Shown one piece after another: positions 1,614 to 20,514 of a stretch of 64,000 nucleotides of DNA. Position 1 is the stretch's first letter. Every line of letters begins with the position of its first letter. The notes beneath the pieces are model-generated. The model did no database searches and was not told the DNA's origin. It saw nothing but the letters and a program-made list of their open reading frames with translations. A program made the position numbers and the translations under genes. The DNA is taken from sequence record MW879344.1, one strand, 5' to 3'.

Positions 1614-1729
1614 GCAGTGATCGTCTAGAGGCTTAGGACACGAAAAAGCGATTCTTGGTTAAGAATCTTACGGCATCAATAAACTTTCATTTCACGAACG
1701 TAACGCAGGTTCGAATCCTGCTCACTGCA
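1614..1729 (+). tRNA. tRNA-Glu(TTC) interrupted by a 43-nt insert (1643-1685) in the anticodon stem
   Basis: Acceptor GCAGTGA/TCACTGC, T-arm GCAGG-TTCGAAT-CCTGC; removing 1643-1685 restores CG|TTC/GAACG stem around TTC (1691-1693). Confidence 0.8.
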
Positions 1730-2059: not shown

Positions 2060-2185
2060 GTGGGGTTAGCTCAGTCTGGTAGAGCAGCGAAAGAAAAAAC
2101 AATGGAATCTTGAAAAGGATTCTAACAGCATTATATCTTCTACTGTAAATTCGCAGGTCGGTGAGTTCGAATCCACCATCCCACA
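2060..2185 (+). tRNA. tRNA-Tyr(GTA)-like, short variable loop, interrupted by ~51-nt insert (~2092-2142)
   Basis: Acceptor GTGGGGT/ATCCCAC, D-stem GCTC/GAGC, GCGAA/TTCGC stem and CT-GTA-AA loop after removing insert. Confidence 0.75.
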
Positions 2186-2195
2186 CAAATTTGTC

Positions 2196-2224
2196 TTGAC
2201 ATGGTGTATCCTGTGTGTTATATT
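2196..2224 (+). promoter_or_regulatory. sigma70-type promoter
   Basis: TTGACA-N17-TATATT. Confidence 0.65.
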
Positions 2225-2533: not shown

Positions 2534-2899
2534 ATGAAAGTATTCATTGATGATATTCGTGACCCAAAAAATTACTTGACACCAGAACAGGCTGATGGTA
2601 TTATTTGGATCAAAGAGTGGTGGTCAGCAAAACGCTTTTTGATTGATCATGCTGCTGAAATTGAAGTGATTCATTTTGACCATTACATGGATGAACCAAC
2701 GTTAACTGGTAAAGATTTATTCTTTATGGTTGCTGGGGATTGTATGTGGGGTGGAAAAGAAACATGGATTAAACTACAGAAAATTTATTTACATTCTTCT
2801 GATGTTGATATGGTTGAAGAACTTGTTGAAGAATATAGTACTGAATTGGCTGAAGCTGGTGTTGAGCTTATTGATAACCATCAAGAAAGGAACTACTAA
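2534..2899 (+). CDS. cyclic-phosphate processing receiver-like domain protein
   Basis: MKVFIDDIRDP...IHFDHY...GKD...IYLHSSD matches the LDDxRxP / DHD / HS pattern. Confidence 0.7.
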   Translation: MKVFIDDIRDPKNYLTPEQADGIIWIKEWWSAKRFLIDHAAEIEVIHFDHYMDEPTLTGKDLFFMVAGDCMWGGKETWIKLQKIYLHSSDVDMVEELVEEYSTELAEAGVELIDNHQERNY

Positions 2900-3256
2900 A
2901 TGAAAGTTTATGTAGATGATATTCGTAATCCACAAAACCATCTAAGTTCTGAACAGGCAGCCGATGTAGTATGGATTAAAGAATGGTGGGATGCACGTAA
3001 CTTTATCTTTTATAATAATTTAGAAATTGAAGTGATTCATTTAGATAATTATCTAGGTGACCGTACCCACACTGGGGCTGATTTACTTCAAATGATTACA
3101 TATAGGTTTCGCCGTGGGGAATTCCCTAAGTTGAAACAAATTTATCTTCACAGTTCTGATAAAGATATTGTGAATAAACTGTATGACAAACATATTGAAC
3201 GTTGTACAGAAGCTGGTGTTGAATTAATTAAAAATTCACGTCCAAACCGTAGTTAA
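2900..3256 (+). CDS. cyclic-phosphate processing receiver-like domain protein (tandem paralog)
   Basis: MKVYVDDIRNP...IHLDNYLG...GAD...IYLHSSD; clear paralog of 2534-2899. Confidence 0.7.
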   Translation: MKVYVDDIRNPQNHLSSEQAADVVWIKEWWDARNFIFYNNLEIEVIHLDNYLGDRTHTGADLLQMITYRFRRGEFPKLKQIYLHSSDKDIVNKLYDKHIERCTEAGVELIKNSRPNRS

Positions 3257-3262
3257 ACAAAT

Positions 3263-3384
3263 GGCGAGTTAGCTCAGTTGGTAGAGCAGGAAAAAAACCG
3301 ATTCTTGTATTGAATCGTACAGCAAACAATACTATTGCACTTTTAATGCCCTTGTCGGGGGTTCAATTCCCTCACTCGCCACCA
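3263..3384 (+). tRNA. tRNA-Lys(TTT) interrupted by a 46-nt insert (3291-3336) in the anticodon stem
   Basis: Acceptor GGCGAGT/ACTCGCC+ACCA; removing 3291-3336 gives GG|GCA-CT-TTT-AA-TGCCC. Confidence 0.85.
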
Positions 3385-3392
3385 AAACATCA

Positions 3393-3444
3393 AATATTCG
3401 AACCTATATGATAAATAAAAATAAATTATATAGGTTCGAATATT
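3393..3444 (+). promoter_or_regulatory. 17-bp inverted repeat over HNH ribosome-binding region, ATAAATA in the loop
   Basis: AATATTCGAACCTATAT (3393-3409) / ATATAGGTTCGAATATT (3428-3444); ATAAATA 3411-3417; ATG 3445. Confidence 0.7.
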
Positions 3445-4056
3445 ATGAATATATGTTTACAATGTAATCAAGAAATTGATGATAAGAAAAAGTTTTGTAA
3501 TAAATCTTGTGCGGCAAAGTACAATAATTCTCATAGAATATTGTCGGAAGAAACAAAATCTAAAATTTCTAAATCTTTAAAAGATCGAGAAGCTAAATTT
3601 ATTGAAACTGAAAATGTTAAGGCTGGTAGACTTCGAGCAGGTGCAAAACGTAGTGAATATGCGATTGGAAAATTATTATCTGATGATTTTGAATCATTAA
3701 GTGTTATAAGAAAGAAAAAACGTGTAAAAATGGAACAAGATAATAAATGTTTAATATGTGATTTATCTGAATGGCGTGGTTCTTTATTAACATTGGAAGT
3801 AGATCATATAGATGGAAATAACATGAATAATAGTAGAGATAATTTAAGAGCTTTATGTCCTAATTGTCATTCACAAACTGAAACGTGGCGTGGGAAAAAT
3901 AGTAAAAAAGTTATTTCAGATGAACTTTTAATTGAGATTATTTCAGTTTCTTCATCTATTGCAGAAGTTATTCGAAATACCAATATGTCTAAATCAAAAA
4001 CTTCGTATAATAAAATCCGTGCTATTATGGAAATGAATAAACTATCATTTAACTAA
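3445..4056 (+). CDS. HNH homing endonuclease with N-terminal Zn-binding motif
   Basis: LEVDHIDGNNMNN...NLRALCPNCHSQT; CxxC...FCNKSC. Confidence 0.9.
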   Translation: MNICLQCNQEIDDKKKFCNKSCAAKYNNSHRILSEETKSKISKSLKDREAKFIETENVKAGRLRAGAKRSEYAIGKLLSDDFESLSVIRKKKRVKMEQDNKCLICDLSEWRGSLLTLEVDHIDGNNMNNSRDNLRALCPNCHSQTETWRGKNSKKVISDELLIEIISVSSSIAEVIRNTNMSKSKTSYNKIRAIMEMNKLSFN

Positions 4057-4065
4057 GGTATAATT

Positions 4066-9164: not shown

Positions 9165-9239
9165 GGGGTACGTAGCTCAGTCTGGTAGAGCAGCCATGCG
9201 AAAACGGTGTGTCGGTGGTTCGAATCCACTCGCTCCCCA
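9165..9239 (+). pseudogene. degenerate tRNA (Phe-like T-arm, anticodon unresolved)
   Basis: Intact D-arm and GGTGG-TTCGAAT-CCACT; mismatched acceptor and anticodon stems. Confidence 0.6.
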
Positions 9240-12353: not shown

Positions 12354-12361
12354 TAAGATTT

Positions 12362-12479
12362 GGAATTCAACAGCAAATCATTCTAAACCCGTAGCATGTC
12401 GTAGGTTCAAGTCCTACCAGTACTTTCGAGTACTGTAGCTCAGTTGGTAGAGCAGCCACCTTAAAAAGAAATGAATTCC
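12362..12479 (+). tRNA. circularly permuted tRNA-like gene, anticodon unresolved
   Basis: T-arm and CAGTACT, TTCG, AGTACTG and D-arm GCTC/GAGC; flanked by GGAATTC/GAATTCC. Confidence 0.7.
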
Positions 12480-12511
12480 AGTATTAATTAAAACAACATG
12501 AGTATAAATCA

Positions 12512-13865: not shown

Positions 13866-13947
13866 GCGGGATTAGCTCAGTGGTAGAGCACTTGCCTTCC
13901 AAGCAAGAGGCGAATAGGTTCCATCGGTTCGAATCCGATATTCCGCT
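13866..13947 (+). tRNA. tRNA-Gly(TCC) with enlarged variable region
   Basis: GCGGGAT/ATTCCGC, U73, CTTGC-CT-TCC-AA-GCAAG, ~15-nt variable region. Confidence 0.85.
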
Positions 13948-14065
13948 CAAACTAAACAAACAATAAGGTGATTTTTATGCTATAGAATCCTAGTACTGGT
14001 CCTCCTAAAGAATTTAATTCTGATATAAACAACTCAAAATTAAACTACTATAGGAAGAACATACC

Positions 14066-17433: not shown

Positions 17434-17510
17434 CGGGGTGTAGCTCAGTTGATTAGAGTGCATATTTTGGGGATATGAAGCCGCTGGTTTGAGTCCAGCC
17501 ATCCCGACCA
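17434..17510 (+). tRNA. tRNA-Pro(TGG)
   Basis: CGGGGTG/CATCCCG, CATAT-TT-TGG-GG-ATATG, ACCA. Confidence 0.88.
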
Positions 17511-17519
17511 ATACAAAAT

Positions 17520-17591
17520 CTCCGATTGGGTCATTGGTTGATCGCATAGTTTGGGACTATGATTAAGGGTGTTCGATTCACTCATTGGAGA
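17520..17591 (+). tRNA. tRNA-Pro(TGG), second divergent copy
   Basis: CTCCGAT/ATTGGAG, CATAG-TT-TGG-GA-CTATG. Confidence 0.8.
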
Positions 17592-17658
17592 CTAACTGTA
17601 GGTTTTGAGTTCAAAACCTACAACATTGATAAATATTCCATAACAGGGAGATTTATCA

Positions 17659-20427: not shown

Positions 20428-20514
20428 GGGTCGTTCACTCAGTTGGTTAGAGTACCGGACTTTTAATCCGGCGGGTATATCCCATCGAAGGTTCGAATCC
20501 TTCACGGCCTACCA
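20428..20514 (+). tRNA. tRNA-Lys(TTT) with long variable arm
   Basis: CCGGA-CT-TTT-AA-TCCGG, GGG-TATAT-CCC variable hairpin, ACCA. Confidence 0.88.

What the first reader, a model, noticed from the sequence alone, without database searches (positions are those of the whole stretch)
3263..3384. tRNA-Lys(TTT) with a 46-nt insert at position 28/29 and encoded CCA
Seen: the cleanest case. Removing 3291-3336 yields a perfect GG|GCA-CTTTTAA-TGCCC arm, with intact D/T arms and ACCA. The break is at the same position as in tRNA-Glu. Established: tRNA-Lys(UUU) is cut by PrrC, RloC and PARIS AriB. Inference: a protected precursor or decoy; the intact exons argue for selection.
Basis: partly seen in the sequence, partly recalled or inferred. 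Interest (0 to 1): 0.87.

Follow-up and report, generated by a model that had tools for sequence, protein, structure and literature searches.

The report
tRNA-Lys carrying a Y-RNA arm
A jumbo-phage gene that looks like a lysine tRNA split by a 46-base insert is most likely a stable tRNA-shaped RNA with a docking arm for the phage's own Ro60 protein, not a spliced tRNA precursor, which ties phage "pseudo-tRNAs" to Y RNAs and RNA repair.

Summary
Window 3263-3384 (Erwinia jumbo phage pEa_SNUABM_49) is a complete tRNA-Lys(UUU) cloverleaf with encoded CCA. A 46-nt insert (3291-3336) splits the anticodon stem between nt 28 and 29.

It belongs to a family. The window has two sisters, a Glu(UUC) copy at 1614-1729 and a Tyr-anticodon copy at 2060-2185. 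Related jumbo phages and metagenomic phage contigs carry more. Compensatory changes support both the split anticodon stem and the insert hairpin.

The intron reading is not supported. The insert is a conserved module: an A-rich strand ending in AAAC, a helix, then 1-3 nt and CRGCA(A). No BHB, group I or ribozyme signature was found.

The same module, circularly permuted, forms the terminal stem and internal loop of a YrlA-like Y RNA at 12361-12480. That is where Y RNAs bind Ro60. The phage encodes a Ro60-fold protein next to an Rnl2-family ligase, plus Rnl1, Pnkp and a CCA-adding enzyme. Two cREC genes end 6 nt upstream of this gene.

Best reading: a tRNA/Y-RNA chimera that tethers Ro60 to a tRNA mimic, possibly as bait or a repair handle against anticodon nucleases. 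Neither excision nor Ro60 binding has been tested.

The parts
3263..3290 (+). 5' part of the tRNA-Lys-like body: acceptor 5' strand, D arm, nt 26, and nt 27-28 (GG) of the anticodon stem
   Evidence: Sequence; Rfam tRNA hit 3263-3381 at 46.5 bits; pairs 27:43 and 28:42 are kept in 12 of 12 homologues, with 5 double changes at 27:43
3291..3298 (+). A-rich 5' strand of the insert (AAAAAAAC). It corresponds to the A-rich ..AAAC strand that precedes the helix in every family member and in the YrlA-like RNA
   Evidence: Alignments A2 and A4; Y-like RNA sequence; the Rfam YrlA consensus has aAaAcUuG at the matching place
3299..3317 (+). Insert hairpin: CGATTC (3299-3304), loop TTGTATT, GAATCG (3312-3317)
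   Evidence: 6 of 7 aligned hairpin pairs show compensatory changes across 12 homologues; RNAalifold predicts the hairpin independently
3318..3336 (+). 3' strand of the insert: TA, then CAGCAA (3320-3325), then an AT-rich linker up to nt 29
   Evidence: C.GCA is invariant in all 16 aligned members and CAGCAA in all 12 Lys-body members. The same CAGCAA lies 2 nt after the terminal helix of the Y-like RNA
3337..3384 (+). 3' part of the tRNA body: nt 29-31 (GCA), anticodon loop CTTTTAA (anticodon TTT at 3342-3344), nt 39-43 (TGCCC), variable loop, T arm, acceptor 3' strand, A73, CCA
   Evidence: All three pairs 29:41, 30:40 and 31:39 show double changes in homologues. The joined flanks are called tRNA-Lys(ttt)
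1614..1729 (+). Sister chimera: tRNA-Glu(UUC) body with a homologous 43-nt module (1643-1685) after nt 28
   Evidence: GenBank mislabels it tRNA-Phe(aaa)
2060..2185 (+). Sister chimera: class-I tRNA body with anticodon loop CTGTAAA (GUA, Tyr) but no long variable arm. The module spans about 2090-2141, with hairpin 2103-2124 and CAGCA at 2126-2130
   Evidence: Found by the module scan; sequence; orthologue in Yersinia phage fHe-Yen9-04; joined flanks are called tRNA-Tyr(gta)
12361..12480 (+). YrlA-like Y RNA carrying the same module in permuted form: TGGAATTC, AA, CAGCAA ... T arm, closed acceptor hairpin, D arm ... AAAAAGAAAT, GAATTCCA
   Evidence: Rfam YrlA 40.5 bits, E 8e-8 locally, below the gathering score of 69; sequence; conserved in 5 relatives with compensatory changes in the terminal helix and the anticodon-like stem
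2534..3256 (+). Two tandem cREC_REC genes (2534-2899 and 2900-3256), ending 6 nt upstream of the chimera. A promoter-like site at 2196-2224 may drive them together with it
   Evidence: Pfam PF20274 at 33.7 and 43.7 bits, cut-off 27; the same synteny in GAP32, CBB and Yen9-04; promoter scan, consensus match only

Best explanation
The locus encodes a stable RNA of about 122 nt. It is a complete tRNA-Lys(UUU) cloverleaf, and its anticodon stem carries, as a side branch after nt 28, a Y-RNA-type stem and internal-loop module: an A-rich strand, a helix, and CAGCAA. The module is most likely kept in the mature RNA and serves as the docking site for the phage's Ro60 (TROVE plus vWA) protein. The RNA would then work like a Y RNA. 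Its tRNA part, with a real anticodon arm and CCA end, engages proteins that recognise tRNA-Lys. Its arm tethers Ro60, and through Ro60 possibly host PNPase or the phage ligase and end-healing enzymes. The likeliest use is counter-defence: bait for, or a repair handle on, anticodon-loop nucleases. What is shown: the anatomy, its conservation and covariation, the identity of the module with that of the YrlA-like RNA, and the presence of the Ro60-fold protein and RNA-repair genes. What is inferred: retention of the arm, Ro60 binding to it, and the bait or tether role.
For: (1) The insert behaves like a conserved functional RNA module. The hairpin covaries and C.GCA is invariant in 16 of 16 members. 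Between phages BF and Yen9-04 the 17-nt 3' flank is identical, while the anticodon arm has been wholly replaced.
(2) The same module, circularly permuted, forms the terminal helix and internal loop of a YrlA-like RNA at 12361-12480. That RNA is conserved in GAP32, XbC2, Kaldavass, Yen9-04 and CBB, with a compensatory C:G to T:A change in the helix. In Y RNAs this stem-bulge region binds Ro60 (PMC4201824; PMC12135203). The Rfam YrlA consensus likewise has an A-rich aAaAc strand before the 3' strand of the terminal helix, and mycobacteriophage Lumos YrlA has ACAGGAA where this family has ACAGCAA.
(3) The phage encodes a Ro60-fold protein, QXO12426.1. It is 100% identical to the BF protein whose AlphaFold model (pLDDT 79) has Ro60, Rsr or TROVE structures as its 12 best PDB matches, E 2e-9 to 5e-7. 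An Rnl2-family ligase lies one small gene upstream of it.
(4) Three family members put Tyr or Ser anticodons on class-I bodies without a long variable arm, beside normal tRNA-Tyr or tRNA-Ser genes. Orthologues also switch anticodon, UUU to GAU and UUC to UCA. This fits mimics better than decoding tRNAs.
(5) Metagenomic loci hold arrays of the same module with strand-swapped helices and no tRNA 3' half, so the module exists outside any exon context.
(6) RNA-repair context: two cREC genes sit immediately upstream, and the genome has Rnl1, Pnkp and a CCA-adding enzyme.
Against: There are no RNA data, so retention of the arm is inferred. The motif CRGCAA differs from the published Rsr motif GNCGAA or CGAA, so the match is one of position and architecture only. 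The window's Y-like RNA scores below Rfam's gathering threshold for YrlA. The chimeras lie about 200 kb from the Ro60-like gene, and no modules were found beside Ro60-like genes in 41 other viral loci. The flanks restore a flawless cloverleaf in every member, which is also what an intron would predict. The bait or tether function is speculation built on the Y-RNA paradigm.
Confidence: 0.5

Rival explanations
1. A true tRNA intron of a new kind. An unknown endonuclease excises the 46 nt and leaves a nick inside the anticodon-stem duplex. The phage healing enzymes (cREC, Pnkp) and an RNA ligase seal it, the Rnl2 family being suited to nicked duplex RNA, and the product is a functional tRNA-Lys(UUU).
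For: The joined flanks give canonical tRNAs in all 12 cases tested. The insertion point is fixed at 28/29 in unrelated tRNA bodies (Lys, Glu, Thr-like). The Lys and Glu bodies resemble host-type tRNAs more closely than the phage's other Lys(UUU) and Glu(UUC) genes do (and own knowledge of E. coli tRNA sequences). Ligases, Pnkp and cREC are present, with cREC adjacent. Lak megaphages were reported to have unexplained tRNA introns (PMC6784885).
Against: No BHB can form: at most 3 of 4 central pairs, and in inconsistent registers. No group I, ribozyme or other Rfam match. The splice-junction nucleotides are not conserved, whereas the interior of the insert is. The same module is the terminal stem of a non-intron RNA and occurs in arrays. 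Members with Tyr or Ser anticodons lack the long arm needed for charging. No uninterrupted orthologue was found. The Lak inserts sit at 37/38 and look different.
Confidence: 0.2
2. The arm is retained but binds a factor other than Ro60, such as a cREC protein, a ligase, or a host nuclease or RNA chaperone. Alternatively it only shields the anticodon stem from tRNA-cleaving defence enzymes.
For: Conservation of the module says only that something recognises it. The cREC pair is the tightest gene neighbour in most genomes. The same phage also adds unusual long variable arms to its other tRNA-Lys(UUU) and tRNA-Gly(UCC).
Against: The module matches the Ro60-binding region of a Y-like RNA in place and architecture, and a Ro60-fold protein is encoded. 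In XbC2 and Kaldavass the Lys chimera has no cREC neighbour. An arm in the middle of the anticodon stem would probably clash with the ribosome, so a shielded but still decoding tRNA is unlikely (inference from established ribosome-tRNA contacts).
Confidence: 0.17
3. Decaying pseudo-tRNAs disrupted by a small mobile or palindromic DNA element, or a DNA-level signal such as a protein-binding palindrome or a minus-strand terminator.
For: Several records annotate these genes as pseudo or 'OTHER' tRNAs. BF has a perfect 22-bp palindrome in the insert. In this copy the minus strand reads as a hairpin followed by a T run. An HNH homing endonuclease gene lies next door.
Against: Compensatory changes maintain every helix across genera, which decay would not do. 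The T run is specific to this copy; relatives have GAAACC there. The element always lies in the same orientation and at the same structural position of the RNA.
Confidence: 0.04

Closest known systems
Bacterial and phage YrlA-type Y RNAs (Rfam RF02553; Chen et al. 2014, PMC4201824; Thermus phage phiLo Yrl1 and Yrl2, PMC12135203)
   Same: Both combine a tRNA-like domain (the D arm GCUCAGUUGGUAGAGC, a T arm) with a stem and large internal loop that carries a short conserved motif. Both are encoded by genomes that also encode Ro60, and both occur in RNA-repair contexts. The window itself holds a YrlA-like RNA with the identical module.
   Different: Topology differs. YrlA has its ends in the Ro-binding stem, a closed acceptor stem and no anticodon arm. 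Here the tRNA is complete, with an open acceptor end, CCA and a real anticodon loop, and the stem is a closed hairpin branching from the anticodon stem. The motif is CRGCAA rather than GNCGAA or CGAA. The genes lie in the tRNA cluster, not next to the Ro60 gene.
Archaeal and eukaryal tRNA introns (BHB, splicing endonuclease) at non-canonical positions, and split or permuted tRNAs
   Same: A short insert in a tRNA gene at a fixed structural position, and exons that restore a perfect cloverleaf. Permuted and split-looking relatives exist (the Y-like RNA and the arrays in L162).
   Different: There is no bulge-helix-bulge. No splicing endonuclease is known in bacteria or was found here. The insert interior is strongly conserved and the host is bacterial.
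Bacterial group I introns in tRNA anticodon loops
   Same: An insert in a bacterial-type tRNA gene.
   Different: 46 nt against more than 200 nt; located in the anticodon stem (28/29) rather than the loop; no match to an Rfam intron model.
Phage tRNAs that evade or replace targets of anticodon nucleases (T4 Pnkp/Rnl1 repair of PrrC damage; T5 tRNA-Lys against PARIS) - own knowledge, not tested here
   Same: A phage-encoded tRNA-Lys(UUU) variant in a genome with Rnl1 and Pnkp. The anticodons represented (Lys, Glu, Tyr, Thr, Ile, Arg, Ser) are typical nuclease targets.
   Different: Those tRNAs are normal-sized decoders with point changes. This one carries a 46-nt protein-docking arm and probably cannot decode.
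'Enigmatic' tRNA introns of Lak megaphages (PMC6784885)
   Same: Oversized tRNA genes in a huge phage, with unexplained and highly conserved inserts. Lak-A1 also has a distant homologue of the Ro60-like protein.
   Different: Lak inserts are at 37/38, about 90 nt long, some are themselves tRNA-like, and they lack the CAGCAA motif.

Membership tests
tRNA (canonical cloverleaf, Rfam RF00005) | Acceptor, D, anticodon and T arms with conserved D-loop and T-loop nucleotides | tested here: met
   Rfam 46.5 bits against a gathering score of 29; all helices kept with covariation; joined flanks are called tRNA-Lys
tRNA (functional decoder) | Uninterrupted 5-bp anticodon stem, length about 76 nt, aminoacylation and ribosome use | tested here: not met
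   As encoded, the stem is interrupted by 46 nt. Whether a 76-nt form is ever made, and whether it is charged, cannot be tested with these tools
BHB-type tRNA intron | Two 3-nt bulges separated by a 4-bp helix at the two junctions | tested here: not met
   Exhaustive register scan in 10 members: the central helix never reaches 4 of 4 pairs and the best registers differ between members
BHB-type tRNA intron | A splicing endonuclease (EndA/Sen) encoded or available | not tested
   Only a handful of ORFs near the locus and a few elsewhere in the genome were screened with Pfam; none was found. The whole genome was not screened
Group I intron in tRNA | Catalytic core (P3-P9), more than 200 nt, inserted in the anticodon loop | tested here: not met
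   46 nt, in the stem; no Rfam intron hit at E<=1 in window 1-30000
Small self-cleaving ribozymes (hammerhead, twister, pistol, hatchet and others) | Match to the family covariance model | tested here: not met
   No Rfam match at E<=1
Y RNA / YrlA | Stem, large internal loop, stem, with a short conserved motif in the loop next to the stem | tested here: met
   Hairpin 3299-3317, flanked by an 8-nt strand and a 19-nt strand that carries CAGCAA, then pairs 27-28:42-43. The same module forms the terminal stem of the window's YrlA-like RNA
Y RNA / YrlA | The published Ro60/Rsr contact motif GNCGAA(N)G or CGAA | tested here: not met
   The motif here is CRGCAA. Lumos YrlA has ACAGGAA at the aligned place. 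The resemblance is positional only
Y RNA / YrlA | tRNA-like domain with a closed acceptor stem and RNA ends in the Ro-binding stem (the Rfam YrlA topology) | tested here: not met
   The finding has an open acceptor end with CCA and a closed hairpin. Only the RNA at 12361-12480 has the YrlA topology (40.5 bits against a gathering score of 69)
Y RNA / YrlA | Genome encodes a Ro60/TROVE protein | tested here: met
   QXO12426.1 is identical to the BF protein whose model matches Ro60, Rsr and phage phiLo Ro60
Y RNA / YrlA | The RNA is bound by Ro60 | not testable with these tools
   Needs pull-down or gel-shift experiments

The most novel reading that the evidence does not exclude
Jumbo phages make a previously unrecognised class of composite RNA: complete tRNAs, possibly chargeable, with a chosen anticodon loop (Lys, Glu, Tyr, Thr, Ile, Arg, Ser) and a Ro60-docking Y-RNA arm. 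They could act as Ro60-tethered baits or sentinels for tRNA-cleaving defence nucleases, or feed broken tRNA into a Ro60, Rnl2 and cREC repair particle. The non-permuted chimeras, the permuted YrlA-like RNA and the strand-swapped arrays would then be living intermediates showing how Y RNAs arose from tRNAs by insertion, tandem duplication and permutation.
Probability: 0.3. Interest if true: 0.85.

Novelty: new variant of a known kind. Interest (0 to 1): 0.68.

Why it matters
Genome records for at least 18 jumbo-phage entries label these genes tRNA-Lys, tRNA-Phe, 'OTHER' or pseudo-tRNA, and the literature on them simply counts them as non-functional.

If the arm is a Ro60 dock, three things follow.

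- It gives phage Ro60 proteins, which have homologues in 709 phage records, a concrete set of RNA partners with built-in specificity through their anticodon arms.
- It makes directly testable the long-standing question of what the tRNA-like domain of bacterial Y RNAs is for: tethering Ro60 to tRNA-binding proteins.
- It offers a visible evolutionary path from tRNA to Y RNA.

It also warns annotators that oversized phage tRNAs are not necessarily intron-containing or dead.

Tried and rejected
- The first IMG/VR pattern (GAAACC..CAGCAA..GGTTC) was too loose. A tighter pattern worked.
- A search for an uninterrupted orthologue (an empty site) using the joined flanks found only unrelated phage tRNAs.
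- BHB motif: none. Group I introns and known ribozymes: no Rfam hits. A hammerhead-like CUGAUAAG in some loops lacks the catalytic G and is specific to one lineage.
- Hfq (A-R-N)n reading of CAGCAACAAUAAC: it fits BF and Yen9-04 but not pEa49, XbC2, CBB or the Glu copies, so it was dropped.
- Pairing of the insert flanks with the D loop, T loop or anticodon: nothing conserved.
- The insert hairpin as a second anticodon arm: loop size is not conserved.
- Minus-strand terminator: seen only in this copy.
- Modules next to Ro60-like genes in 41 other viral loci: at chance level, 8 found against 6 in shuffled sequence.
- Lak megaphage tRNA introns: different position and sequence.
- Felixounavirus was checked for similar chimeras, but the two regions fetched contained no tRNAs, and the check was abandoned.
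- Single-sequence MFE folding of this copy does not give the cloverleaf. Only the comparative evidence does.

Full report
**Source.** The window is 100% identical to Erwinia phage pEa_SNUABM_49 (MW879344.1), a 358-kb jumbo phage of the species Eneladusvirus BF. The window covers the last 64 kb of the record, which holds its large tRNA cluster. ARAGORN finds 21 tRNAs in the window but not the gene in question.

**Observation.** Positions 3263-3384 read as a complete tRNA-Lys(UUU). They contain the acceptor stem, D arm, nt 26, nt 27-28 (GG), then 46 nt (3291-3336), then nt 29-31 (GCA). These are followed by the loop CTTTTAA, TGCCC, a 5-nt variable loop, the T arm, the acceptor 3' strand and ACCA. 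Rfam's tRNA model scores it 46.5 bits against a gathering score of 29. With the flanks joined in a script, ARAGORN calls tRNA-Lys(ttt). GenBank already labels it tRNA-Lys(ttt). A module scan then found a third copy at 2060-2185. It has a class-I tRNA body whose anticodon loop, CTGTAAA, carries the Tyr anticodon GUA, but it has no long variable arm.

**A conserved family.**
- Orthologues of the Lys copy, all with the insert, occur in Serratia phage BF, five other Erwinia phages, Yersinia phages fHe-Yen9-03 and -04, GAP32 (two copies), CBB, Xanthomonas phage XbC2 and Erwinia phage Kaldavass.
- An IMG/VR scan added metagenomic phage contigs of up to 425 kb. They have the same insert at the same place but other anticodons: CCU, GCU, UGU and UGA.
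- On 12 distinct sequences, 95.5% of cells in the cloverleaf plus insert hairpin form standard pairs, against 72.9% after shuffling and 35-45% with slid partners.
- 19 of 28 pairs show changes on both sides. These include all three lower anticodon-stem pairs (29:41, 30:40, 31:39), the 27:43 pair and 6 of 7 hairpin pairs.
- RNAalifold finds the same helices on its own.

So the split stem and the hairpin are both under selection as RNA structure. Decay or a DNA-level accident is excluded.

**What the insert is.**
- All copies share one plan: an A-rich strand ending ..AAAC (or AAAAGC), a 5-10-bp helix of variable sequence, 1-3 nt, then C-R-G-C-A(-A), then a 9-15-nt AT-rich linker to nt 29.
- C.GCA is invariant in 16 of 16 aligned members.
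- Between BF and Yen9-04 the 3' flank CAGCAACAATAACTCAT is identical, while the whole anticodon arm has changed from ACA-CTTTTAA-TGT to ACT-ATGATAA-AGT. The insert is therefore better conserved than the anticodon.
- Junction nucleotides are not conserved, except G28.
- No bulge-helix-bulge can form.
- No intron or ribozyme family matches at E<=1.

**The key link.**
- Rfam gives a sub-threshold YrlA (Y RNA-like) match at 12394-12456 (40.5 bits).
- Read in full, 12361-12480 is TGGAATTC-AA-CAGCAA-(25 nt)-T arm-closed acceptor hairpin-TA-D arm-A-GCCAC-CTTAAAAAGAAAT-GAATTCCA.
- Its 5' and 3' ends form an 8-bp helix. That helix is followed by AA-CAGCAA and preceded by an A-rich strand. This is the same module as the tRNA inserts, circularly permuted.
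- This RNA is conserved in GAP32, Kaldavass, XbC2, Yen9-04 and CBB. The terminal helix shows a compensatory C:G to T:A change, and the anticodon-like stem shows compensatory changes too.
- In Y RNAs this terminal stem and adjoining internal loop are the Ro60/Rsr binding site, marked by a short motif, GNCGAA or CGAA (PMC4201824; PMC12135203).
- The Rfam YrlA consensus also has an A-rich strand (aAaAcUuG) before the 3' strand of the terminal helix. Mycobacteriophage Lumos YrlA reads ACAGGAA where this family reads ACAGCAA.
- The resemblance is one of place and architecture. The motif sequence differs.

**The protein partner exists.**
- CBB_183 (DUF2828 plus DUF7788; PHROG 'RNA-binding protein') has an orthologue in BF.
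- An AlphaFold model of the BF protein (pLDDT 79, pTM 0.79) has Ro60, Rsr or TROVE structures as its 12 best PDB matches. These include Ro60 of Thermus phage phiLo, with E 2e-9 to 5e-7 over the full length.
- pEa_SNUABM_49 encodes an identical protein, QXO12426.1.
- One small gene upstream of it is an Rnl2-family RNA ligase, and nearby is a CCA-adding enzyme.
- The genome also has T4-type Rnl1 and Pnkp.
- Two tandem cREC genes (PF20274) end 6 nt before the Lys chimera. The family is predicted to process cyclic phosphates and is linked to RNA ligases (PMC7824862).
- This synteny holds in GAP32, CBB and Yen9-04, but not for the second Lys copy type in XbC2, Kaldavass and GAP32.

**Against a decoding precursor.**
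- Three members carry Tyr or Ser anticodons on class-I bodies without the long variable arm that bacterial TyrRS and SerRS need (established knowledge). Each sits beside a normal tRNA-Tyr or tRNA-Ser gene.
- Orthologues switch anticodon, Lys UUU to GAU and Glu UUC to UCA in Yen9-04, while keeping a 7-nt loop with U33 and A37.
- The phage has other Lys(UUU), Glu(UUC) and Tyr(GUA) genes.
- Metagenomic loci L162, L172 and L139 show a tRNA 5' half followed by arrays of the module. In these arrays the helices pair between neighbouring units, and no tRNA 3' half follows. The module therefore exists outside any exon context.

**Most likely mechanism.** The RNA is processed like a tRNA at its ends and keeps the arm. 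The arm docks the Ro60-like protein. The tRNA part, with a chosen anticodon arm, engages tRNA-binding proteins. By the Y-RNA paradigm of gates and tethers, this would bring Ro60, and possibly PNPase or the ligase and healing enzymes, to whatever grips tRNA-Lys, tRNA-Glu or tRNA-Tyr. Host anticodon nucleases are the obvious candidates. All of this step is inference.

**Main rival.** The main rival is a new protein-dependent tRNA intron whose nick in duplex RNA would suit an Rnl2-type ligase. It is not excluded, because every member restores a perfect cloverleaf and the repair enzymes are present. However, it lacks any endonuclease or junction signal. It also does not explain the Y-like RNA, the arrays or the class-II anticodons.

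**Verdict.** I class this as a new variant of a known kind: a Y RNA or tRNA mimic in a non-permuted topology that keeps the full tRNA. I found no paper describing it. The CBB paper merely counts 31 of 33 tRNAs as functional.

Noticed in passing
window 12361-12480 (+): A YrlA-like Y RNA: terminal 8-bp helix, CAGCAA motif, T arm, closed acceptor hairpin and D arm. It is unannotated in all records and conserved in GAP32, XbC2, Kaldavass, Yen9-04 and CBB (CBB has a longer acceptor hairpin).
   Followed up: yes
window 2060-2185 (+): A third interrupted tRNA-like gene with a Tyr anticodon (GUA), no long variable arm and a bulged T stem. It is not annotated in MW879344.1. The orthologue in Yen9-04 is labelled tRNA-Pseudo-GAA.
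   Followed up: yes
window 20428-20514 and 13866-13948 (+): The phage's other tRNA-Lys(UUU) has a 15-nt variable arm (CGGGTATATCCCATC), and its tRNA-Gly(UCC) has a variable region of about 15 nt. Both are unusual for these class-I tRNAs. They may be another way of altering recognition near the anticodon stem.
   Followed up: no
window 9166-9238 (+): A degenerate tRNA-like sequence (Rfam 36.4 bits; acceptor stem mismatched). It lies between tRNA-Ser(TGA) and tRNA-Ser(GGA), the slot that the interrupted tRNA-Lys occupies in XbC2 and Kaldavass.
   Followed up: partly
window 3385-4060 (+): A free-standing HNH/NUMOD3 homing endonuclease gene (3445-4056), preceded by a long inverted repeat (about 3393-3443), is inserted just after the chimera. 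It is absent from BF and four sister Erwinia phages. The adjacent tRNA is only 80% identical to BF's although the flanks are 97% identical. Its T arm resembles the Yen9-04 version, which suggests co-conversion during homing.
   Followed up: partly
L162 4080-4480 (IMGVR_UViG_3300010365_000426); also L172 and L139: A tRNA 5' half followed by four or five tandem units: (strand A') CUGAxAAG (strand B) UACAGCAA...AAAAC. Each unit's helices pair with the neighbouring unit. These look like arrays of permuted mini Y-like RNAs. One unit contains a T-arm hairpin, and the array ends in a terminator hairpin.
   Followed up: partly
MW879344.1 99701-102909 (locus L223 3702-6910): An Rnl2-family RNA ligase with an N-terminal PHA02142 OB domain lies one small gene upstream of the Ro60-like gene. 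CBB and GAP32 have a similar ligase-then-Ro60-like order. In CBB the Ro60-like protein is annotated as a virion structural protein.
   Followed up: partly
window 2196-2224 (+): A near-consensus sigma-70-type promoter (TTGACA, 17 nt, TATATT, with TG) between the Tyr-like chimera and ORF 2259. It could drive ORF 2259, both cREC genes and the Lys chimera as one transcript. This is a consensus match only.
   Followed up: no
window 17434-17510 and 17520-17592 (+): Two adjacent tRNA-Pro(TGG) genes 9 nt apart. The second is a weaker match (44.3 bits).
   Followed up: no
phage collection: 709 phage records have homologues of the Ro60-like protein. They include Felixounavirus, mycobacteriophages, Listeria, Staphylococcus, Campylobacter and Vibrio phages, and Lak-A1. 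Whether these phages also carry tRNA/Y chimeras was not examined.
   Followed up: no
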